A stretch of DNA of 59,807 bases from Gekko japonicus (Eukaryota): contig NW_015163195.1 in NCBI RefSeq assembly GCF_001447785.1, positions 1 through 59,807 on the forward strand, in the 5' to 3' direction. A program made the translations under genes and the position numbers. This document shows, piece after piece, positions 5,764 through 51,430 of the stretch (position 1 is the first letter of the stretch; each line of letters starts with the position of its first letter). The notes below the pieces were generated by a model that did not search any database, was not told the DNA's origin, and saw only the letters and a program-made list of their open reading frames with translations.

Positions 5764-6780
5764 TGTTAGCTCAGACGTTTTATATTGGGCTATTTCTGGA
5801 CTATGTTATATGAATAAAGCTTGATGCAAAGGGCTAATAAAAAGAGACTGTGTAATAAAGAGTTCACCTTGAGGGCACCCAGAGAAGATGCCAGCTGAGG
5901 TTGATAATCTGCTGAAGCAACATCGTTCCAGAGGTGTCCTGGTGTCTCCGGCTTATCAAGAGTGTGCAAACACAAGGTTTACAGCAAACACAGAAAACTC
6001 ATTAGTTAGCCCAGACGCTCAGTCTAAACATGAGAGGCTTATTTCAGAGTTCCCCCTCCGACAGACTGCTAGTCCACATGGAGAATCCACATGGCTAGAG
6101 ATGAGTCAATGCTATTGTTGCCGCAGCACGTACCTCTTTTCCCATGCCCAGGTTCCAACGGCCAAAGTTAATCAATAGATTGGAAATTGACCCATTAGCC
6201 AATCCCCGACATGTAGGGTAGGGCCACCTGGTGTAAGCCGCCTGAGCCCACCCCCTCTTGCTCGCAAGAAGCTTTAAAACTTAGAACACAGAGCAGCCAG
6301 TTCACTATTCTCTCTTTTACCTACGTCCTCTGCCTGTCTGCTTTCCCCCTTCAATCCAGCTTTCTATCCAGAAACCCTTGCCTCGCTTTTACACCTTAGT
6401 CTGCAGCTAGGGTGCCACACGTGTTCTTGGCTGGTCTGAGTACACGCGCTTTTCCCGTTTACATATTTCCTTCCCTCCCTAATACCTCCCTGCTGGAAGC
6501 TTTAGGAGCCGTGTATCACCTGAGGTAAATATCACCCACCAACGATAACCTGCAAATGCGAAAGTGCTTTACCAAATCTCTTTGTTTTTACTTAGTTCTT
6601 GTGTGTGTGTATGATATTGTGTGCTTTGCATGATATTTAGTAAACTAAAGAGAATTTTACTTCTGTCTCTGTCTCTTCACTGGGAACGTATTGGTGCAGC
6701 CCATCCTCTGTAGACATTGACCTGAATCCCAATTAACAAACTGTTCCAATTGCCTCTCCTAAAGAGCAATTCGGCTAACA
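5764..6780 (+). mobile_element. Solo LTR (ERV1/Gypsy-type)
   Basis: TGTTAGC...GCTAACA termini; perfect 4-bp TSD GAGC; TTTAAAA and AGTAAA signals. Confidence 0.8.
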
Positions 6781-6784
6781 GAGC

Positions 6785-7030
6785 ACTGCAAACTTTATAC
6801 GACATAGGTCTTTCAAATGAGTAGGCGCAAATCTCTGACATGTAGAATGACATCTTGGCGACTCCGCGGGTGGTGGTGTTTTCAGTGCATCTGTAGTAGT
6901 TGGAGACATAAGATGATCAGATTCTCCATCATTTTGAACAAGAGGAGACACCATTTTGTCCTGCTTCTCAGTTTTAGTGACTGTGTTCCCAGGCAGATGT
7001 ATAGTTGGACTTCCTAAATCTGAGATTGTC
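6785..7030 (-). mobile_element. Possible degraded Gypsy pol C-terminus
   Basis: Minus frame SPRCHSTCQRFAPTHLKDL resembles the RRSxR..P..LKDY motif after integrase. Confidence 0.3.
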
Positions 7031-7505
7031 ACGGAATTAGGGCTAGTTTGAGCCTCAGTCCTAACCCTATACTATTTCAATTTTTGTAGCAATTAGCTCC
7101 TGTAGTTGAAACTTTGGTTCCGTTTCCAAAGAGGCTTTAGGACACTTTGGGTGATGTGACCTTCTGGTACAGATAATGCTGTACATGTCTTTTACCTTAC
7201 ATGACTTCTGTCTTTTGGAATGTTTATATGCTATCATATATGAGCCCGTTCACGGGGAGGGCGGGTTATAAATTTAAATAAATAAATTCTAAATAGATAT
7301 GAGTACAGAACGAAGCTTCCGGGGACTCTCTTAGCCAGCCTGGACTCTCTGAGTCAATCTAGTTGAACCCGGACTTTTCTTGACTTTCCTGACCCCAGAT
7401 ACAGAAAGAAAGGGCTGACTTTGTTGTATATGTCAGATGTATGTCAAACACTCGTCACAGACCTGACAGACAGTTACATTAGCCCCTATGAAAAAGACAT
7501 ACTTA

Positions 7506-8059
7506 GGTTGCGATCACACGCACAATTAGCTGCGCCATAGGCGTGAATGCCAGGCAGATTTAAAGGGTGCGATCAGACATGAACATCTGGGAAGCGCCTC
7601 GCACCTGTCAGCAACCTGTTTTGCTCCACTGCAGAAGACACAAAGACACAGGGGAAAGTCCGGTAAAAGGGGAAAGTCACAAAGACATGGGAAAGTCCGG
7701 TAGTAAATGGGTTGCTATGGGCCACAGACGGACTTTCCCCTGTCTGATTGCTCCAGCACGCTCTCATGGCGTCGGGATGTTCTGATCGGGCCATTCCGAC
7801 TCTGTGCCATTTCCCCCCCCTTCACAGTATACGCATCATCCCACACTCCATAGGGAGCCCTCGTGCTGAGATGTGATCCATCAATTCCCCATTTAAGCGC
7901 ATTGGGAATAAATGGCAAAAAAACCACACCTGACTCACCCGCGGTGTGTTTGATCACGCAGTGGTGTGCTGCCCCCACAGCTTCAAAGGGCTGCGTGATT
8001 CCTCCGGAGGAAATAGCCTCACTTCCCCCCTGTGTTATCTTGCGCGTGTGACCGCAACC
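7506..8059. mobile_element. PIF/Harbinger MITE
   Basis: TIR GGTTGCGRTCACACGCRCAA; TSD TTA at both ends. Confidence 0.85.
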
Positions 8060-10140
8060 TTAATGTCTGGATATAGTTTTGTTCCTTGTTGTTCAGGCCA
8101 GAGCATCCAAGGATATCCTTGACAGAATGACAAGTGCTCTGTTTATGTATTGGGGTTGAGTTGAAATAGTCTGTGTTGATTGTTGAAATGCTACAAAAGT
8201 GTTTTCTGACTTAAGAGTGGGTAAGAGAATAAACTATTATGGCCCCCATGCTGCTGGCATTCAGAACAACTTCAGACACTGCCCTAGCTTCATCGGACCA
8301 CCTCACAGAAATTCGCCATCTGTACTCAACTGCACTTTATGTAATTTATTTGTGATTTGAAATTTTATAATATTGCATTTATTGTGTGTTGTTGCATTTT
8401 AAACTGTTGTACGCCGCCTTGAGCCTGCCTGTGCAGGCAAGGTGGGATATAAATTGAAATTAATAGATAATAAATAAATAAATAAATAAATAAATAAATT
8501 CCATCTTGTAAAGTGACCGTATAAGACACAAGTCCTGTAACTGTTCTCACAGTAGCAGGTATGCACAAAGGACCCAAGCCAAAGTTTTAAACATAGACTG
8601 CCTCTCCAATCATTTAAAAAAAAAAGTGGTTTTGCTTGTCGGTTCTGTTGCCCTTTCTGCTGTTGTTTATAGTGCATATGTCCTGTCAGGTATGGGTGTC
8701 ACAAATCGAACCTCGGCCTCAGTTTCCTGCCCATTAACATTTCAGCTGGAGATAAACTTGTGCTAGAATGCAGTGAAATTCTATGACTGAGCAAATACTG
8801 AGTTAGCCTTCTAGAGAGACTTTTACCCGGTATCCAGGAAATGACTTCTTTAAAAGACTGCGCTGCATGTTCTGCTAGGCCATTCAGTGCCAGGGGAAGT
8901 GGTGCAAAGGTAACATGCTGAATGCCATATTATTCCATAAACTGTTTGAATTGTTAACTAGTAAAGGAACTTGCATTATCCATCACAAGCGTTTCAGGCA
9001 ACACGTGCACACTGAAACACATTCTTAACTTTTCAATGGTAGCTTCACTATTTGATGTAGACATAGGATAAATCTCCACCCATTTTGACTGAGCATCTGC
9101 CAATACGAGGAACATCTTACCCAGATAGGAACCTGCATAGTCTACATGTAATCACCTCCAAGGTTGATCTGGCCAGTTCCAAGGATGAAGGGGAATCACA
9201 GCAGGCATTTTACGGCTTCCTTTTTTTTTAAGTCTGTACCATGTGCTCAATTTCCTGGTCCATTCCTGGCCACCACAGGTAGCTTCTAGCTAAGCCTTTC
9301 TTCTTAGTGCTCCCAGGTTGGGCCTGGTGTAACGGTCTCCTGTCCTTGTTTTGGAATCACCACACGGGTGCCCCTCAATACACATCCATCATAGACGCTC
9401 AGTTCCCATTGACGTTGGTAGAATAATATACGTTCTTTGTTTTCCAAAAATATATGGCCATCCTTTCAACATAGATTCCCCGACTTTGGCCAACATGGGG
9501 TCTGTATAGTATAGCTAGTATTGACATCATCTTTTGAGGCATATTGTATTGTGTGATTTTAATTTATTGTTTTATTTTAATGGATGTATACGTTCTTAAT
9601 TTTAATTGTAAACCTGCACTGTGTGCAGATCAGTTTGTATGGGACCTGCCCCGGGGCTGCTATGTGGGGAGGGCGGGTTATAAGTATCAGTTCACGACTT
9701 TATGTCGATGGTGGAGTGGCAAGGCAATCTATTAGTTGTTGTTGTTTTTTAAACCCCTGGAGGGGTATTTTTATTTTTTCAATATGACTACAAACTACAA
9801 AGAAAAATATAGGAAGGGGAACTACAACTATGAAACTATTGGTTTCTAGAGCAAGTTTTTTTAGACTCTTGGGTGGGGCTGGGGGATGAGAGAAAGTAAT
9901 GGAGGAGAAGAGGGTGGTCAAAGGCTGGAGTGCAACCTCCACATGCAAAGGCTTTGTATGTTCAAATGCCACCTGCTTGGAATCCATAGTGGTGGCAACT
10001 AGGACCCTTAATGCAGTGTTTCTTTGTTTCCCAAAAACGTTTGGTTGGCCGATGGCCGCTGTAGTGAATGGAATGCTGGACTAGACGGGACTGAAGGGAA
10101 CCTCCACGTTTTCCGAGGCAGTGAACTTCTGAATCACATT

Positions 10141-10850
10141 AGGGAGCGGTGGCGCAGGCAGTTAAACGCCTGCATGTAACATCACTCGTGCAGCCACTGT
10201 GGCTGTTCGAGACTCACCGCGGTCGAGGTGAGCTCACGACCCTTGTCCTAGCTCCCGCCCACCCAGCGGCTCGAAAGCTAAATGTAATCTTAATGCGAGT
10301 AGACAAATGGGTACCTACCTTTAGAAGGGTAGGGGGCACCCTCCTCCAGCGAGGTGTGTGGAGGCGATAACGGTGGCGGCAATGGCGGCGGTGGACATCG
10401 GCTGCAGCAAAAGGGTGTTCCGGTGGTGAAGGCAGTGTGGCACAATGCAGCGGCGGCGGCAGCGAGGCTGGAGGAGCGATCCCTGGTGGCCAGCGGTAAC
10501 ATCGGGCAGCTGTCGTCGACAAGGCAGAGGTGGAGGCATGCGATGAGGCCATCAACAGGCGCGGTGGAGCCAGAAGGACGTGGCCGAGGCCGGAAGAGGC
10601 CGCATCATGCGCCGGCCTGCCTGAGCGCCAGAGGAGGAACAACCAGCCGAACGAACCACCGGGAAGAGAGCCGAGCCAGGACCGCTTCCACCAGGGTGCC
10701 GGTAGGCAGCCCCATCCCCAAATACAATGTGCCCCAAGTTAGGGAACAAATGTGTGCTTAGCACCCCACTCTGTAAACCGCCCAGAGACCCCCTACCAAG
10801 GGGCTTAGGGTGGTATAGGAAATTGAAAGTTAAATAAAAAAATAAATAAA
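10141..10850 (+). mobile_element. Unclassified chimeric structured SINE, copy A
   Basis: A-box-like TGGCGCAGGCAG, B-box GTTCGAGAC, Sauria-like module, GC-rich body, L2-like TGTAAACCGC..GGTATAG..(AAAT)n tail. Confidence 0.7.
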
Positions 10851-11112
10851 TGTCCATGTGTAGAGTCACCTCTTAGGTTGTTGGAAAAGGGTGTTCACTA
10901 TGACCAGTGTGTTCTCTTGACAAAACTCTGTTAGCCTTTGTCCTGCTTCATTTTGCTCTCCAAGGCCAAACTTGTCTGTTATTCTGGTTACCTTTTGACT
11001 TCCTACTTTAGCATTCCAGTCCCCTATGATGATGAGGACATCATTTTTTGGTGTTAGTTCTAGGAGGTGTTGTAGGTCTTCATAGAACCAGTCCATTTCA
11101 GCCTCTTCTGTA
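10851..11112 (-). mobile_element. Bov-B/RTE APE endonuclease fragment
   Basis: FYEDLQHLLELTPKNDVLIIIGDWNAKVGSQ...NTLFQQPKR. Confidence 0.9.
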
Positions 11113-11300
11113 CCACGGCCAGCGTTGATGCGGCCGTCGTGGATGAACCACCTCGGTAGGTGGTTCATTTTTGATGCGTTTCATCGGGGGAAGGGCTGGA
11201 TCGGAGACGGGTGCGCAACGCTGGCCAGATGTTGCAGTGGGATCACGCCCGTTTGCTCCGGCCCACTCCCGGCCGACTCCCGGCCCCAAACCCCCAGTAA

Positions 11301-12042
11301 GTTGAGAAACCACAGATTCTCTGGCATTAATCTGACAGGGGCAGGAGTGACACAACAGGAAATGTCCACATCTTCGCACATAGCTGACATCTTGGGTCCA
11401 TGCAAGGTTGGCTGGAGAGAAAGGCCCATTCTCTGCAACACTCGTTAAAAGGGATTCTTCCATTGGCCGATCTGAATTCTTGTCAGAAGGTCAGCAGGCA
11501 ACCCGAATCCAGAAGCCCAGAATACAATCCACATCCTACCTTTTACTCGGACCAGCCAAATGGCACAGAACAGAAATTCAGGCCAGGGAGTTGCTTGGGG
11601 GAGAAAGCGTAGGCCAAAACCACTAATCCAGCTCGCAGCCTGTTGACATGTTCCGGACATGCCTCTGGGTATAAATTATATTTCTCTCCCCTGACATTGT
11701 GAGACGCAATCCAGACAAAATCCCCTGAGCTTCCAGCCACCACTTTGCACTCCCTGCGGGCTTCCAATCCAGGAGCATCCCCGAGGACCGTAGGGGTTCT
11801 GCTCCCCCCCCAAAGGCAGTCTCGTTTTTGTATACCTCTGGCTGCTCTCGGGCATCAGAGACTTCCCACTGGTGACAGAGAGAGGCTTTTGAGGCCACCC
11901 ATCTTGGGGCTACCATGCAGCCACATCATGAAAACTTTGGGCTAAGCTGCTCTCATCTTGCAAACAGGATGAACAGGAACCGAAAGCCTGGAGGAGGATG
12001 AGGAATCCAACCTTGACTTGTCATCCATGTGCAAAGGTGAGT
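11301..12042 (+). promoter_or_regulatory. Candidate promoter and 5' leader exon of OR-2
   Basis: Block conserved in 4 units; TATAAAT at 11670; donor CAAAG|GTGAGT at 12036/12037. Confidence 0.6.
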
Positions 12043-12346
12043 AGGTTTCTCCAGCCAACCGTGTTTCTAGAGGCTGAGTAGTTCCTCTCTCAAAGGGCAG
12101 GCAGAAAAGGGGGTGACTTCCTGAGTCCTTTGGCTGGCCGCAGCCACTCCAGGTGCGCCTCACTGAGCTACGGTTTGTTCAGGAGAATGGAATGGAGACC
12201 ACATGTATTTTCTCTAAGATAATAAAATATACCTTGAACAAAGGACGACAGTTCGTGTCTTTGCTGCTTCTGCAGCTCAGATTAAGGCAACCAAGGTAAT
12301 GCCTCAATAAAAGAACAACCATACAATGTTATCTTTTGCATGTAAC

Positions 12347-12452
12347 CAGTGTTCCCTCAAAACTGAGTTAGTGTGAGCTAGCTCACAGTTTTTTAGCCTC
12401 CAGCTCACACATTTTTGTCTCAGCTCAGGAAGGATGGCTGACCAAGACTGAG
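12347..12452 (+). mobile_element. hAT-like MITE family A, truncated by CR1
   Basis: CAGTGTTCCCTC terminus. Confidence 0.7.
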
Positions 12453-12469
12453 CAAGAGAGAGATCTTGT

Positions 12470-13280
12470 AGACATAGTAGATAATTCAATGAAAATGTTG
12501 AGACAGTGTGTGACTGCAATAAAGAAGGCCAACGCTATGCTGGGGATTATTAGGAAGGGAACTGAAAACAAATCAGCCAGTTATCATAATGCCCCTGTAT
12601 AAGTCAATGGTGCGTCCTCATTTGGAGTACTGTGTACAGTTCTGGTCACCACACCTCAAAAAGGATATTATAGCATTGGAAAAAGTGCAGAAGAGGGCAA
12701 CTAGAATGATCAAAGGGTTGGGACACTTTCCCTATGAAGAATGGTTAAAGCGCTTGGGGCTCTTTAGCTTGGAGAAACGACGGCTGAGAGGTGACATGAT
12801 CGAGGTCTAAAGGATTATGCATGGGATAGAGCAGGTCGAGAAAGAAGTCCTTTTCTCCCTTTCTCACAATACAAGAACTCGTGGGCACTCCATGAAATTG
12901 CTGAGCGGTCGGGTTAGAACGGATAAAAGGAAGCACTTCTTCACCCAAAGAGTGATTAACACTTGGAATTCACTGCCACAGGAGTTGGTGGAAGCTACAA
13001 GCATTGATGGCTTCAAGAGGGAACTGGATAAATATCTGAAGCAGAGGTCCATCAGTGGCTATTAGCCACAAGGTATAGATAGGAACTCTCAGTCTGGGGC
13101 AAGGGATGCTCTGTATTCTGGGTGCTTGGGGGGGGCAACAGTGGGAGGGCTTCTAGTGTCCTGGCCCCACTGCTGGACCTCCTGGTGGCACCTGGTATTT
13201 CTGGCCACTATGTGACAGAGTGTTGGACTGGATGGGCCATTGGCCTGATCCAGCATCGGCTTTTCTTATGTTCTTATGTT
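12470..13280 (+). mobile_element. CR1 LINE 3' fragment
   Basis: [20 protein letters not shown]...[10 protein letters not shown]; (TTCTTATG)n tail. Confidence 0.92.
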
Positions 13281-13476
13281 CAAACAGTGAATAACCAATA
13301 ACAGATAGGAGAATCCATTGAGAAGAGAACCATAAAAAAAACTCAGGCATCAGACAGGGGAGGAGGNNNNNNNNNNNNNNNNNNNNNNNNNNNNNNNNNN
13401 NNATGCACACGAAAGCTTAGCCCTAGAATTAAACTTTCTTGATCTTAAAGGTGCCCAACTGGACTCAAACTTTGTT

Positions 13477-14098
13477 TATTATTTATTTATTTATTTCATC
13501 ACATTTCTATACCGTTCCTTCCCGAAGGCTCGGAGCGGTTTACACATATATTTAATCATCTGACTAGGGTGGAGATATTCAGTGGAGATGTATGCCTTAC
13601 CAGGCACCTTAAGCAGCGTAGATCTTTTTTTTCTTTCTGAGGCGGGTCTTGCTGGAACCAAGCGGTAGTGTCTTTTTTCTGGTGGAGGTCTGTTCTCTTC
13701 GGCTCGGCTCCTCCGGGCTGGCCCTCCATGGCGCGCGGCTGCATGATGAGTCGCACTGGTCTCTGTCCCGCAGGCTCCGACCGTGCTTACATCACCACGC
13801 CTCCTGGACCACACCTCCACAAGTTGCCTGCCGTTTTTTGCCGCCGATCCGTCGCCGTGCTCTTTTTCTGCCGGCTCGTTCATTGCCGCTGCTGCCCTCC
13901 AGTATTGGAGGTAGGATGCCCCCCCACTCCTAAGGAGTGGGTACCCATTTGTCTAATCGCCACTTTAAGGGCTTTCGAGCCGCTGGGTGGGCGGGAGCTA
14001 GGACGAGGGCCAGGAGCTCACCCCAGCCGCGGTGGGTGTTAACAGCTGTTCGGAGATAGATTACTTGCAGGCATTTACTGCCTGCGCCACCACTCCCT
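13477..14098 (-). mobile_element. Unclassified chimeric structured SINE, copy B
   Basis: Same head, module and tail as copy A; empty site in unit 3 near 25395. Confidence 0.7.
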
Positions 14099-14587
14099 TC
14101 CGTTCAACGCTCCCTTCCGTTCAACAGAAGTCGATAGACCCAGGATGGGGAGAACAGAGACATTGTCTTTTTGCACTGAGGAGACCATCCATGGAGAACC
14201 GCCCCCCTCACTATGCGTTTTTAAAATGTTCCTGATTTTTTCCCCTTTCCTTTGGATAGCAGGAAGCCTGTCTCGGTCACCTGCTGAATTCCAGCTATAG
14301 AAATGCTAATTCCTGGCTGGCAGAGTTCACTGAGGAATCTCCTGGGGCTCTTGGAGATTTCCCAGAATGCCTTCCAGGAGTGATCCCAGGATGCACCTGG
14401 GTGTCCCAGGGTCCACCTGTGTGACCTGGGCGGACCAGATCAAAAGGGGGTGGAGAGAGTGATGCTAAGTGGGCAGTCAGAGGTTTAATGGGTGGAGTCA
14501 GAGATTTAATAAAAGTGCTTGATCCCAGGAGGGAGGGTCTCTTGCTGCTGATCCTTCGAAGAGGACAGGCTGCTGAGCCCTGGTCTG

Positions 14588-14878
14588 AAGAGAAGAAGAG
14601 AAGAGATTGGATTTATGCCCCGCCCTTCACTACCCAAAGGGGTCTCAGAGCAGCTTACAAACTCCTTTCCTTTCACTTCCTCTCCCCACAACAGACACCC
14701 TGTGAGGTCAGTGGGGCTGAGAGAGCTCTGACAGAAACTGCTCTTTTTCAAGAACAGCTCTTATCAGAACTACGGCTTGCCCAAGGTCATGCAGCCAGGT
14801 GCAAATGGAGAAGTGGGGAATCAAACCCAGTTCCCCCAGATTAGAGTCCGCGCACTTAACCACTACACCAAACTGGCT
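14588..14878 (-). mobile_element. Squam3-type SINE, full length
   Basis: Head GCCAGTTTGGTGTAGTGGTTAAG on minus strand; (TTC)n tail. Confidence 0.85.
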
Positions 14879-34814: not shown

Positions 34815-36392
34815 AGGTTTTTGGGTAGAATGGAAGGGAGACCACCAATTCTCCCTCTAAGCTTGTGAGTCTTGTGAGCCAAAAATTCCACTTTGTGAGC
34901 TACGGGCATTAAAGTTGTGAGCAAGCAAGTTGGCTGCTGCATGAATTAGTTTGCCCTGGAGCCCTGCTTCCTGAGCGAAGACAAAAATGTGTGAGCCAGG
35001 GGCTAAAAAACTATGAGCTAGCTCACACTAACTCGGCTTAGAGACAACACTGGAGACCATCAATGTTTCCTCTAAGATAATAAAATATACTATGAACAAA
35101 GGATGACAGTTTGTTTTTTTGCCACTTGGGCAGCTCAAATTAAGGCAACCAAGGTAATGCCTCAATAAAAGAACAACAATACAATGCTATCATCTGCTTG
35201 CAGTGCCAGTTCTTCTTTCCAAAGTAAAGTAAGCAAAACGCCCGACCAGTGAATCCTGTTCCTAGGACATTGCAGGCAAAATGTCAAGAGTAGGGAAGAT
35301 AAGAAAGGGAATTTGACAGAAGGAAGGAGAGGGAGAAGCAGGCACAGAGGGGATTTGACTGACCACGTAAAATATGGAAGATGGCTAAGAAAACACAAAC
35401 AGGCTTTGTCAGTTGTGCAGACCTGTTGTTTAAATGGGGCAAAACACCAGGACCCAAATGTGATCGTGGTGCCGTCCGCCGAACCATTTTCCATCTGGCA
35501 CAGGAATGTGAGCATTGTGTTTTCCAGGGAGATGTGGCGGAGCTCTTTGAAATCTGAGTGGATTGAAATTTAGATATTAGTGTTTAGGGGGATTGTTCAA
35601 TCAGTCTGCATGCACATTGTATCAACTTCATTCTGTATTTTATATCAATACATGCTTCCTGTGTCAATACATAAATAATAATTAGGCGAGTAATCCATGT
35701 ATTTTTTATGGTCACGCATACAGAATACAGACAGAGAGGAAAGCTTGGGAATACAGAGGAAAAATACAGTCTGTAATAGATGCATTAAGCCTGAGATGGC
35801 AAGGAGGCAGTCGAGAGGACATCCCAGACAGGCCGTTGGAGGGGAAGGACTGGAGGGAGAGAGGACGCTCCAAGCTCCTGGTGGGCGTCCTCGGGGGTAG
35901 GTGGTGCCAAAGACCTAGTGAGAGGGCCCGTGCTATGTGGTGGCCAGAGGTCAGAGCCAGTTCTGGGACACTTGCATCCAGGTACTCAGACATGGAGTTT
36001 TGTGGGAGAACTTGGGCCAGTCATAAGAACATAGGAGAAGCCAATGTTGGATCAGGCCAGTGGCCCATCTAGTCCAACACTCTGAATCACACAGTGGCCA
36101 AAAATACCAGGTGCCATCAGGAGGCCCATCAGTGGGGCCAGGACACCAGGAGCCCCTCCCACTGTTTCCCTCCCAAGAAGCACCAAGAATATTTATTTAT
36201 TTATTATTCAGATTTATATCCTGCCCTCCCCAACAGGCTCAGGGCGGCTAACAATAAGGGCACAAAGCCATAAAAAAACAGTTAAAAGCAGAATAAAACA
36301 ATACAAAATTACAATAAAGTGCTGGTGCTCTGAAAGACGCTCTGAATACAGAGCATCCCTTGCCCCAGACATAAGAACATAAGAGAAGCCAA

Positions 36393-49091: not shown

Positions 49092-49273
49092 TAGGGCTCC
49101 TTTTGTGGCAGGAACCCCTTTGCATATCAGGTGACACACCCCTAATGTAGCCAATCCTCCAAGAGCTTACAGAGCTCTTCTTACAGGGGCTACTGTAAGC
49201 TCTTGGAGGGTTGGCTACTTTAGGGGCATGTCGCCTGATATGCAAAGGAGTTCCTGCTACAAAAGGAGCCCTG
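49092..49273. mobile_element. Palindromic hAT-like MITE
   Basis: Near-complete 180-bp palindrome AGGGCTCCTTTTGT...ACAAAAGGAGCCCT; absent in units 2 and 4. Confidence 0.8.
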
Positions 49274-50984: not shown

Positions 50985-51430
50985 TATTTATCTATTTATT
51001 TATCTATTTATTTATTGGATTTGTATCTCACCCTCCCCTTGACAGGCTCAGGGCGAGCTCCAACAGTAAAAGTGCAATACAGTTAAAACTATTTTAAAAC
51101 ACAATATAAAAGATGTGACATAACAACACATGTCGCAGGTGCCATACCACTCTAATAAAAGACAGATGCTTCAGTGGTTGATAATGTTAAAGTCAGTTTT
51201 CTGTTATAAAGATCTTTAAATTTAGGATCCCAAGGACCCAGAGCTTCAGATAGACCCAGGTTACAGATGGAGGGGCTACAGATGGAGGGGGCCCAAGGGG
51301 GGGGGAGAAAGTCCACTGCCTCAACCAAAAACCCAGCAGAAGACCTCCGTCTTGCAGGCCCTGCGGAATTGTCATAAATCCTGCAGGGCCCTGATCTCAC
51401 ACGGGAGCTCATTCTACCAGGCAGGGTTGA
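50985..51430 (-). mobile_element. L2-like 3' fragment
   Basis: (TTTA)n tail; CTCCGTCTTGCAGGCCCTGCGGAA; absent at paralogous 17392. Confidence 0.6.

What the first reader, a model, noticed from the sequence alone, without database searches (positions are those of the whole stretch)
10141..14098. Two divergent copies of a chimeric, structurally constrained Pol III retroposon with compensatory base changes
Seen: copy A (10141-10850, +) and copy B (13477-14098, -) both start AGGGAG(C/T)GGTGGCGCAGGCAG. Both carry a module related to the Sauria SINE at 23912, a GC/CpG-rich body and an L2-like (AAAT)n tail instead of the Sauria ACCTTT tail. Primary sequence diverges strongly but the stems persist. 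ACCCA/TGGGT in A and B corresponds to ACCTA/TAGGT in Sauria (a T-A to C-G swap). The next hairpin is CCTACCTT/AGGGTAGG in A, CCCACTCC/GGAGTGGG in B and CCAC/GTGG in Sauria. CCTCCA/TGGAGG closes different loops in A and B, and GCAGGC/GCCTGC forms in both heads. Short invariant islands remain: TCGAAAGC, AGAYAAAT, GCGGCAATG, CATCATGC, GAGCCGAGCC, TCCACCAG. Both copies keep many CpGs and are absent from sister units, so they look young, yet they differ from each other like old structured-RNA homologs. Established: SINE bodies can derive from RTE 5'UTRs and tails from partner LINEs. Inference: a possibly undescribed, diverse family under selection for RNA fold (ribozyme or RT-recruiting module) that switched from an RTE to an L2 partner.
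Basis: partly seen in the sequence, partly recalled or inferred. Interest (0 to 1): 0.78.

Follow-up and report, generated by a model that had tools for sequence, protein, structure and literature searches.

The report
Two long lizard SINE copies
These are two recent insertions of a long mobile element (a SINE) of a lizard genome, built from a tRNA-like start, a core shared with the well-known Sauria SINE, a fast-diverging middle and an L2-type end; it is an ordinary kind of element with one truly compensated hairpin.

Summary
Copy A (10141-10850, +) and copy B (13477-14098, -) share a ~200-nt head plus core (75.5% identity), an L2-type 3' module and a (TAAA)n tail. Their CpG-rich, T-poor middles barely align. 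The core matches the Sauria SINE at 23912 (70.5% over 95 nt). The N gap (13367-13402) lies outside both copies.

One 8-bp hairpin after GGTACC carries three double compensatory changes between A and B (about 0.1% under a random-substitution null). One pair in ACCYA/TRGGT covaries. A structure taken from one copy's fold and projected on the other still loses 10 of 62 or 12 of 56 pairs. Single-sequence folding z-scores are unremarkable, and Rfam finds no ribozyme or tRNA.

The layout (A/B boxes, Sauria core, L2 end) fits a catalogued kind: Anolis SINE 2, which is L2-mobilised. I could not compare sequences with Repbase, Dfam or SINEBase.

Public reads show that each middle type has its own multi-copy subfamily in this species and none in a relative at 85% likeness. 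Both sense strands lack any T4 run, as a long Pol III transcript requires.

This scan found the same family twice before on other DNA of this genome (s1-832976, s1-816646).

The parts
10141..10850 (+). Copy A, whole element (710 nt)
10146..10220 (+). A: tRNA-like head, 75 nt. It is closed by a 7-bp acceptor-like stem (10146-10152 with 10214-10220). It holds the hairpin GCAGGC/GCCTGC (10154-10159 with 10168-10173) and a box-B-like TGTTCGAGACT at 10204-10214.
   Evidence: Fold (z -2.9, 3 of 200 shuffles fold as well). Box scan (2 mismatches). ARAGORN and Rfam do not call a tRNA.
10223..10339 (+). A: core shared with the Sauria SINE. It includes ACCCA (10261) / TGGGT (10308), the box-B-like GGCTCGAAAGC (10268-10278) and AGACAAAT (10301).
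10314..10333 (+). A: hairpin CCTACCTT / AGGGTAGG (8 bp including one U-G pair, 4-nt loop). This is the compensated hairpin.
10343..10364 (+). A: hairpin CCTCCA / TGGAGG with a 10-nt loop
10340..10771 (+). A: variable middle (GC 67%, G 41%, T 11%, CpG observed/expected 0.84 over element positions 211-560)
   Evidence: multi-copy depth
10772..10830 (+). A: LINE-derived 3' module (TGTAAACCGCCC...GGGTGGTATAGGAAAT) that forms a stem-loop
   Evidence: Alignment with Squam3-type copies. Fold z -2.75 (1 of 200 shuffles).
10831..10850 (+). A: (TAAA)n tail
13477..14098 (-). Copy B, whole element (622 nt)
14029..14093 (-). B: tRNA-like head with a 7-bp acceptor-like stem (14093-14087 with 14035-14029). 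A 10-nt deletion relative to A removes the head's box-B-like motif.
13916..14025 (-). B: core shared with the Sauria SINE
13923..13941 (-). B: hairpin CCCACTCC / GGAGTGGG (8 bp, 3-nt loop)
13896..13911 (-). B: hairpin CCTCCA / TGGAGG with a 4-nt loop
13545..13915 (-). B: variable middle (T 10%, CpG observed/expected 0.89 over element positions 196-480)
13497..13544 (-). B: LINE-derived 3' module
13477..13496 (-). B: (TAAA)n tail
14093..14125 (.). 17-nt tandem duplication (1.9 copies, 100% match) across B's 5' junction. It repeats 7 nt of target plus the first ~10 nt of the element.
23912..24240 (+). Sauria-type SINE copy used for comparison (core 23966-24084, tail ACCTTT-type)
25392..25394 (.). 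Empty paralogous site for copy B
   Evidence: flanks 13403-13476 with 25323-25394 and 14119-14192 with 25392-25465
13367..13402 (.). Assembly gap, outside both copies; not filled
10851..11300 (-). Fragment of a very high-copy repeat that abuts A's tail and is absent from the sister units. By recall it looks like an antisense Bov-B LINE; no homology search was run.
   Evidence: Depth 0.1-1.5 million and a loose end at 10850. No match in the sister units.

Best explanation
A and B are two independent, recent insertions of one long (620-710 nt) squamate SINE family.

Anatomy, 5' to 3':
1. A decayed tRNA-like head with internal Pol III A/B-box-like motifs.
2. A ~115-nt core homologous to the core of the Sauria (Squam1) SINE.
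3. A ~370-430-nt GC/CpG-rich, T-poor middle.
4. An L2-type LINE-derived stem-loop.
5. A (TAAA)n tail.

The two copies come from different source lineages (subfamilies). These lineages keep head, core and 3' module but have diverged almost beyond alignment in the middle.

Inferred mechanism. Pol III starts at the head and can read through the whole element because the sense strand has no T4 terminator. An L2-clade reverse transcriptase recognises the 3' stem-loop and tail, and inserts the copy by target-primed reverse transcription with little or no target-site duplication. The conserved sequence islands and the compensated hairpin reflect selection on the few source genes (promoter elements, RNA stability or protein binding, reverse-transcriptase recognition). 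They do not indicate a ribozyme.

Shown: the anatomy, the homologies, the multi-copy subfamilies, the young age signs, the compensated hairpin and the T-run avoidance.

Inferred: Pol III transcription, the L2 partner, and selection on source genes.
For: - Shared head/core and tail.
- Core homology to the Sauria copy, and to a Sauria-like SINE with a third kind of head (L001).
- 3' module: it aligns with 10 Squam3-type copies and 3 other (AAAT)n-tailed elements of the window. Passages of PMC7983390 tie the Squam3 3' module to L2-clade 3' ends, (TAAA)n tails and rare target-site duplications.
- Multi-copy subfamilies (DNA contigs of organism A). Summed depth is 6,200-11,000 over A's body and 8,300-10,000 over B's body, against 117-433 in the flank bins 11370-12251. 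It is 128,000-266,000 over the cores. In organism B the bins lying wholly within the middles read 0 (three bins: 10488-10634, 13575-13721, 13722-13868) and 2.9 (10635-10781). The bin 10341-10487 reads 104. The same flank bins there read 25-638.
- Youth: CpG observed/expected is 0.76-0.78 against 0.33. B has an empty site. The sister units lack A.
- T-runs: 0 runs of T>=4 in 1,332 nt of sense strand, against 5.1 per kb in the window and 6 runs on the antisense strands.
- Box-B-like motifs.
- Hairpin with 3 double changes.
- Literature: Anolis SINE 2, head 'Box A & B', partner Anolis LINE 2 (table in PMC3747384); 'believed to be mobilized by the L2' (passage in PMC4476161).
Against: - No Repbase, Dfam or SINEBase comparison was possible, so family identity rests on architecture and on recall.
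- No L2 LINE 3' end was available for direct comparison.
- ARAGORN and Rfam call no tRNA in the heads.
- Copy B lacks the head box B.
- RNA-seq reads cover both strands about equally, with no pile-up of starts. Pol III transcription is therefore not shown, although poly(A)-type cDNA libraries would miss it.
- The squamate SINEs described in PMC10702118 are 190-350 nt long, half the length seen here.
- A has no clean empty site or target-site duplication.
Confidence: 0.8

Rival explanations
1. The head/core region (about 10225-10370) is a structured RNA module under selection for its fold. It acts as a ribozyme or as a reverse-transcriptase- or protein-recruiting domain, and its stems are kept by compensatory substitution while the sequence drifts.
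For: - The hairpin after GGTACC keeps 8 bp in A and B through 3 double changes and 1 single change. A helix like this arose in 21-26 of 20000 random-substitution simulations.
- A shorter hairpin sits at the same place in the Sauria copy and in L001.
- ACCYA/TRGGT covaries once among 4 sequences.
- The A+B consensus fold has 50 pairs, none broken, and a column-shuffle z of -6.2.
Against: - RNAalifold picks pairs that survive, and 74 of 300 shuffled alignments also gave 4 or more double changes.
- With the structure taken from one copy only, 10 of 62 and 12 of 56 pairs break in the other copy.
- Core z-scores against dinucleotide shuffles are -1.9, -0.2, -1.0 and +0.7.
- The antisense consensus folds nearly as well (-53.8 against -57.6 kcal/mol), so no strand-specific RNA signal is seen.
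- There is no Rfam ribozyme at E<=10.
- Only 4 sequences carry the core, so covariation cannot be tested properly.
- Invariant islands such as TCGAAAGC resemble box B. They may be DNA-level promoter elements.
Confidence: 0.15
2. The middles are not diverged homologs. They are replaced cargo: each subfamily arose by template switching or recombination that joined the SINE head/core to the 5'UTR plus 3' end of a different L2 lineage. This is a bipartite non-autonomous LINE with a SINE head.
For: - Kojima 2018 (PMC5786205, passages read) documents SINE bodies built from LINE 5'UTRs plus 3' ends.
- The first halves of the two middles show no similarity above chance (z 0.5, 159 of 500 shuffles reach it).
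- CpG-rich composition is typical of LINE 5'UTRs (general knowledge).
Against: - The second halves keep collinear similarity (z 3.25, 8 of 500; whole body local z 5.9, 0 of 500).
- The bodies share ordered islands. That fits deep divergence better than wholesale replacement.
- The window holds no full-length L2 for comparison.
- An earlier follow-up of this scan (s1-816646) also concluded 'not a cargo carrier'. That is not independent evidence.
Confidence: 0.2
3. The compensated hairpins are kept at the DNA level. Quasi-palindrome correction by intra-strand template switching during replication or reverse transcription would do this without any selection on RNA function.
For: - The antisense strand folds almost as well as the sense strand.
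- The hairpins are short, near-perfect palindromes with small loops.
Against: - A's hairpin contains a U-G pair that would be a C-A mismatch on the other strand.
- The five one-sided changes in the consensus fold are all G-U compatible on the sense strand.
- The hairpin position is conserved across elements with different stems.
Confidence: 0.08
4. The middles encode a small protein: sense ORFs of 135 aa in A and 130 aa in B.
For: Long stop-free runs on the sense strand. For B only 13 of 1000 segment-wise shuffles reach the observed length.
Against: - tblastx finds no similarity in the bodies.
- The conserved islands fall in different frames. The shared ATG opens B's ORF but a 15-codon frame in A.
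- A's run is not unusual (178 of 1000).
- The antisense strands are equally open (174 and 133 codons).
- There is no Pfam family above threshold.
- T-poor sequence has few stop codons.
Confidence: 0.02

Closest known systems
Anolis SINE 2 (AnolisSINE2 / ACASINE2; Piskurek, Nishihara & Okada 2009, Gene 441:111). By recall only, this belongs to the RepeatMasker/Dfam class 'SINE/tRNA-Sauria-L2'.
   Same: It is a lizard SINE. Its head is described only as 'Box A & B', and its partner is an L2-clade LINE (table in PMC3747384; passage in PMC4476161). By recall it also has a Sauria-type core and a length above 600 nt.
   Different: No sequence comparison was possible. The original paper is not held, and Repbase and Dfam are not available here. 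The present copies are from another squamate, which earlier notes of this scan call a gecko (I did not test that). They fall into subfamilies with unalignable middles.
Sauria SINE / Squam1 (Piskurek 2006; Kosushkin 2006)
   Same: The ~95-115-nt core is shared: 70.5% identity over 95 nt and nhmmer E 8e-14. The islands TCGAAAGC and TAGAYAAATRGGTACC are the same, and a hairpin follows them in both.
   Different: The head does not align. The body downstream of the core is unrelated. The 3' end is L2-type with (TAAA)n, not Bov-B/RTE-type with ACCTTT repeats. The element is twice as long.
Squam3 (Ther1/MIR-derived squamate SINE, PMC7983390)
   Same: The 3' LINE-derived module follows the same template, and (TAAA)n is one of the usual Squam3 tails. 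Target-site duplications are rare in both.
   Different: Squam3 has a different tRNA head and a CORE domain, and is 218-239 nt long. Only the 3' module of A and B matches the window's Squam3-type copies.
Squam2 (Grechko et al. 2011)
   Same: It is squamate-wide and abundant in geckos, and is described as tRNA-related (passages of PMC10702118).
   Different: The paper is not held and no sequence was available. [quoted passage not shown] Identity with the present family is unknown.
SINE superfamilies with a shared central domain (CORE-, V-, Deu-, Meta-SINEs) and bipartite LINE-derived SINE bodies (PMC4824008 abstract only, from the listing; PMC5786205 passages)
   Same: One conserved central module is combined with different heads (tRNA-like here, another tRNA-like head in L001, 5S in 5S-Sauria) and with different LINE ends (RTE, L2).
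   Different: The domain here is the Sauria core, which is restricted, as far as shown, to squamate-type elements and one metagenome contig of unknown origin.

Membership tests
L2-mobilised Sauria-core SINE (Anolis SINE 2 type) | Internal Pol III promoter (A and B boxes) in the 5' head | tested here: met
   In A, a box-B-like TGTTCGAGACT lies at element position 64 (2 mismatches), and TGGCGCAGGCA lies at positions 10-20 (3 mismatches to box A, judged by eye). Copy B has lost the head box B through a 10-nt deletion. Both copies keep a second box-B-like GGCTCGAAAGC in the core.
L2-mobilised Sauria-core SINE (Anolis SINE 2 type) | Core homologous to the Sauria SINE core | tested here: met
   blastn 70.5% over 95 nt; nhmmer E 8e-14; the alignment of 4 cores has 45 invariant columns.
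L2-mobilised Sauria-core SINE (Anolis SINE 2 type) | 3' end shared with an L2-clade LINE | tested here: inconclusive
   The 3' module aligns with that of 10 Squam3-type copies of the window. PMC7983390 relates the Squam3 module to L2 3' ends. No L2 LINE was available for a direct test.
L2-mobilised Sauria-core SINE (Anolis SINE 2 type) | Sequence match to the published consensus | not testable with these tools
   Repbase, Dfam and SINEBase are not available. The papers are not held. Motif strings were not found in any relevant paper.
L2-mobilised Sauria-core SINE (Anolis SINE 2 type) | Dispersed multi-copy family | tested here: met
   the depth over cores, heads, bodies and tails is 15 to over 1000 times that of the unique flank bins. 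Variant positions are seen in 5-39 separate contigs.
Sauria / Squam1 SINE | Bov-B (RTE) derived 3' end with ACCTTT-type repeats | tested here: not met
   The tails are (TAAA)n and the 3' module is of the Squam3/L2 type. The sequence downstream of the core does not match the Sauria copy.
Squam3 | Squam3 head and CORE domain | tested here: not met
   Only element positions ~633-712 of the A/B profile match the window's Squam3-type copies.
tRNA-derived head | Recognisable cloverleaf or tRNA model match | tested here: inconclusive
   ARAGORN finds none. Rfam finds no tRNA at E<=10 or at E<=1 on the whole window. A 75-nt span closed by a 7-bp acceptor-like stem is present in both copies.
Self-cleaving ribozymes (HDV-like, hammerhead, twister and others) | Match to a ribozyme covariance model | tested here: not met
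   No such hit at E<=10 in 9900-14300 or at E<=1 in the whole window. Cleavage itself cannot be tested here.
Structured RNA under purifying selection | Significant covariation across many independent sequences | tested here: inconclusive
   Only 4 cores are available. One hairpin has 3 double changes. The global projection tests are weak (P 0.03 and 0.08).

The most novel reading that the evidence does not exclude
The Sauria core is a true functional RNA domain: a three-way junction whose third arm is kept by compensatory change. It is shared by SINEs with at least three different heads and two different LINE partners. In this genome it drives an unusually long Pol III retroposon, whose many parallel source lineages are held CpG-rich and free of T-runs by continuing selection while their middles diverge freely.
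Probability: 0.15. Interest if true: 0.5.

Novelty: new member of a known kind. Interest (0 to 1): 0.3.

Why it matters
If only the ordinary reading holds, this is annotation. It gives a long L2-mobilised SINE family with a Sauria core, useful as a young presence/absence marker and as a reminder that repeat libraries should hold several middle types.

Two points could interest people who study retroposons:
- A hairpin in a SINE central domain shows compensatory change. The function of such domains is a long-standing open question.
- A 620-710-nt element has no T4 run on its sense strand. This suggests that the Pol III terminator rule shapes the composition of long SINEs.

Both points need genome-wide copy sets before they can carry weight.

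Tried and rejected
- tRNA and ribozyme searches: ARAGORN on the window and on L001 found nothing. Rfam at E<=10 on 9900-14300 and at E<=1 on the window plus L001 found nothing in the copies.
- More copies for a covariation test. The two-island core pattern gave 0 in viral contigs, 3 in the window (A, B, Sauria), 1 in metagenome contigs (L001) and 0 in prokaryote genome contigs. A 22-nt core pattern gave 1 hit in genome contigs (L002), which is a chance match inside a bacterial gene and was dropped, and 0 in viral contigs. nhmmer with three profiles found no further core in the window. I therefore built no covariance model, because four sequences would not support one.
- Coding reading of the middles: rejected.
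- Tandem-repeat origin of the middles: TRF at score 30 finds no array inside either body.
- Strand-specific fold: not shown.
- Literature. The Piskurek 2009 and Grechko 2011 papers are not held. The RepeatMasker class names with 'Sauria-L2' or 'Sauria-RTE' were found in no held paper. '5S-Sauria' was found in three papers. The motif-string search returned only unrelated primer hits. The 2026 Bov-B/Sauria paper (PMC13295347) contains none of my structure terms. The supplementary figures of PMC10702118 and PMC7983390 may show Squam2 and L2 alignments that bear on family identity.
- Organism: not determined by me. 'Gecko' comes from earlier notes of this scan only.

Full report
**What is there.**
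The window is squamate DNA with tandemly repeated units. It contains Sauria-type and Squam3-type SINEs and several N gaps.
- Copy A (10141-10850, +) and copy B (13477-14098, -) both begin AGGGAG(C/T)GGTGGCGCAGGCAG.
- blastn aligns only their first ~210 nt, at 75.5% over 212 columns, E 2e-30.
- A global alignment adds the last ~80 nt, which hold TGTAAACCGC...GGTATAG.AAAT and then (TAAA)n.
- The assembly gap 13367-13402 is outside both copies, 75 nt beyond B's tail. Its two flanks match one paralogous stretch in the same order and orientation (13279-13363 with 25146-25230; 13403-13476 with 25323-25394). The locus therefore looks continuous across the gap. The paralog has 92 nt between those flanks against 39 positions here, so the stated gap length should not be trusted. 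I did not infer the unread letters.

**Anatomy.**
- *Head.* In both copies a ~75-nt span is closed by a 7-bp acceptor-like stem (A: 10146-10152 with 10214-10220). It holds the GCAGGC/GCCTGC hairpin. A has a box-B-like TGTTCGAGACT (2 mismatches). B has lost it through a 10-nt deletion. ARAGORN and Rfam do not call a tRNA. This fits the description of the Anolis SINE 2 head as just 'Box A & B' in the table of PMC3747384.
- *Core.* A 10223-10339 and B 14025-13916 match the Sauria copy at 23966-24084: 70.5% over 95 nt by blastn and E 8e-14 with an A+B profile. They also match a Sauria-like SINE on a metagenome contig (L001). L001 has a different tRNA-like head and an (ACTTTG)n tail. The heads of A/B, of the Sauria copy and of L001 do not align with each other. 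One core therefore occurs with three heads.
- *Middle.* It spans ~430 nt in A and ~370 nt in B. GC is 59-67%, T is 10-11%, and CpG observed/expected is 0.84-0.89, against 0.33 for the window.
- *3' module.* It aligns with the LINE-derived region of 10 Squam3-type copies and 3 other (AAAT)n-tailed elements in the window. Passages of PMC7983390 say that the Squam3 3' terminus resembles L2-clade LINE ends, that its tails are largely (TAAA)n or (CTT)n, and that target-site duplications are rare.

**Age and copy number.**
- B is an insertion relative to a paralogous empty site at about 25392-25394. Its 5' junction carries a perfect 17-nt tandem duplication (14093-14125).
- The three sister units lack A. 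There, A together with a 450-nt fragment of a very high-copy repeat (10851-11300) replaces about 700 nt. The event included a deletion or rearrangement, and no target-site duplication is visible.
- I laid public data on 9900-14300 at 85% likeness. In DNA contigs of the same species label (X1), summed depth is 117-433 in the flank bins 11370-12251. It is 6,200-11,000 over A's middle, 8,300-10,000 over B's middle, 128,000-266,000 over the cores and 21,000-66,000 over the heads.
- Positions where other contigs disagree with the window copy are seen in 5 to 39 separate contigs. These sums are not copy numbers, but they show that each middle type has its own set of copies and that cores far outnumber either middle.
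- In a related organism (X15) the cores are present (6,100-6,600). The four bins lying wholly within the middles read 0, 0, 0 and 2.9. The bin 10341-10487, which takes in the first ~150 nt of A's middle, reads 104. The same flank bins there read 25-638.
- The two subfamilies are thus specific to this lineage at that threshold. This agrees with the high CpG content in saying that the copies are young.

**Are the middles homologous?**
Against dinucleotide shuffles the two middles align better than chance:
- whole middles: global z 4.85 (2 of 500 shuffles reach it); local z 5.9 (0 of 500);
- second halves: z 3.25 (8 of 500);
- first halves: z 0.5 (159 of 500).

They share 13 8-mers against 4.7 expected (12 of 1000). 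The 3' half at least looks like deeply diverged homologous sequence. The 5' half could be diverged beyond recognition or replaced. TRF finds no tandem array in either middle.

**Structure claims.**
- The strongest item is the hairpin just after GGTACC. A has CCTACCTT/AGGGTAGG and B has CCCACTCC/GGAGTGGG. Both form 8 pairs, with three double changes and one C-G to U-G change.
- I simulated random substitutions of the observed number and type on either copy's own fold. A helix of 6 or more pairs with 3 or more double changes and at most 1 broken pair arose in 21 and 26 of 20000 trials.
- The Sauria copy and L001 have a shorter hairpin (CCAC/GTGG) at the same place.
- ACCCA/TGGGT (A, B, L001) against ACCTA/TAGGT (Sauria) is one further double change. 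L001 has an RTE-type tail, so this swap does not track the change of LINE partner.

Results against a global constraint:
- RNAalifold on A+B gives 50 pairs with none broken and a column-shuffle z of -6.2. The same procedure finds 4 or more double changes in 74 of 300 shuffles.
- Projection of A's fold on B gives 36 pairs the same, 6 changed on one side, 2 double, 10 broken and 8 gapped, of 62 (null 15.7 broken, P 0.03). The reverse gives 12 broken of 56 (null 16.2, P 0.08).
- z-scores against dinucleotide shuffles are -2.9 and -1.4 for the heads, -1.9, -0.2, -1.0 and +0.7 for the four cores, and -2.75 and -0.85 for the 3' modules.
- The antisense consensus folds nearly as well as the sense one (-53.8 against -57.6 kcal/mol).
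- GCAGGC/GCCTGC and CCTCCA/TGGAGG do not vary, so they say nothing for or against structure.
- The invariant island TCGAAAGC is part of a box-B-like 11-mer in all four elements. It may be conserved as a promoter element.
- No ribozyme family matches.

The sense strands of A and B (1,332 nt together) contain no run of four or more T and only one TTT. The window averages 5.1 such runs per kb, and the antisense strands of the two copies have six. T4 is the Pol III terminator (established knowledge). A 620-710-nt Pol III transcript can only exist if the sense strand avoids it. This gives a simple reason for the T-poor middle, and also for the long stop-free frames. The two sense ORFs (135 and 130 aa) have no similarity to each other. 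The shared islands fall in different frames. The ORFs are matched by equally open antisense strands and hit no Pfam family.

**RNA evidence.**
Two cDNA RNA-seq runs cover the copies on both strands about equally (3-14 reads deep over the middles in X21), with no place where molecules begin or end. This neither shows nor excludes Pol III transcripts, which such libraries capture poorly.

**Comparison with what is known.**
- An L2-mobilised lizard SINE with an A/B-box head, Anolis SINE 2, is in print (Piskurek et al. 2009). I saw it only through the table of PMC3747384 and a passage of PMC4476161; the paper itself is not held.
- 5S-headed Sauria SINEs show that heads are exchanged on this body.
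- By recall only, RepeatMasker/Dfam list classes named tRNA-Sauria-L2, tRNA-Sauria-RTE and 5S-Sauria-RTE. My search for these names in held papers found none.
- What may be less usual is the length and the many lineages with unalignable middles. PMC10702118 gives 190-350 nt for Squam1-3.
- Two earlier follow-ups of this scan, on other pieces of the same genome, reached the same description (s1-832976 and s1-816646). My read-laying repeats the subfamily result on new copies. It is not independent of theirs in method.

**Verdict.**
The chimeric Pol III retroposon, the L2-type end and one compensated hairpin hold up. The ribozyme and the 'undescribed family' claims do not.
- The direction of any RTE-to-L2 switch is untested.
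- I file this as a new member of a known kind, with modest interest.

Noticed in passing
window 10141-10850 and 13477-14098: There is no run of T>=4 on the sense strand of either copy (1,332 nt; one TTT in all). The antisense strands have six such runs and the window averages 5.1 per kb. This fits terminator avoidance in a long Pol III transcript.
   Followed up: partly
window 25279-25395; gap 13367-13402: The paralog of B's target holds a 37-nt inverted repeat (95% complementary, 43 nt between the arms). The assembly gap next to B lies in the matching interval of B's locus.
   Followed up: partly
window 14093-14125: A perfect 17-nt tandem duplication spans B's 5' junction. It repeats 7 nt of target plus the first ~10 nt of the element, and may be a trace of second-strand synthesis.
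   Followed up: partly
window 10851-11300: A fragment of a very high-copy repeat is cut exactly at A's tail; other genomic copies continue beyond 10850. It looks like an antisense Bov-B LINE by recall only. Together with A it replaces ~700 nt that are present in the three sister units.
   Followed up: partly
L001 215-565 (metagenome contig Ga0105243_10582704): This is a Sauria-like SINE with a different tRNA-like head (good A and B boxes), the same core and an (ACTTTG)n tail. The source organism is unknown.
   Followed up: partly
window 49151-49214: A palindromic hairpin matches the mir-28 family on both strands (44.5 and 42 bits, below the gathering score of 64). mir-28-type hairpins are L2-derived in mammals, by recall.
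   Followed up: no
window 8400-8499, 24707-24792, 36190-36260, 50985-51082: Four other elements carry the same L2-type 3' module and (AAAT)n tails but have unrelated bodies. The tail-proximal sequences shown for 24707 and 36190 are identical.
   Followed up: no
window 14587-14877 and at least 9 other places: These are Squam3-type SINE copies (tRNA head, CORE-like body, (CTT)n-type tail). Their 3' module follows the same template as that of A and B.
   Followed up: partly
window 24019-24040: The Sauria copy has an internal direct duplication of AAGAAATTGC within the loop between TCGAAAGC and GTAGATAAAT.
   Followed up: no
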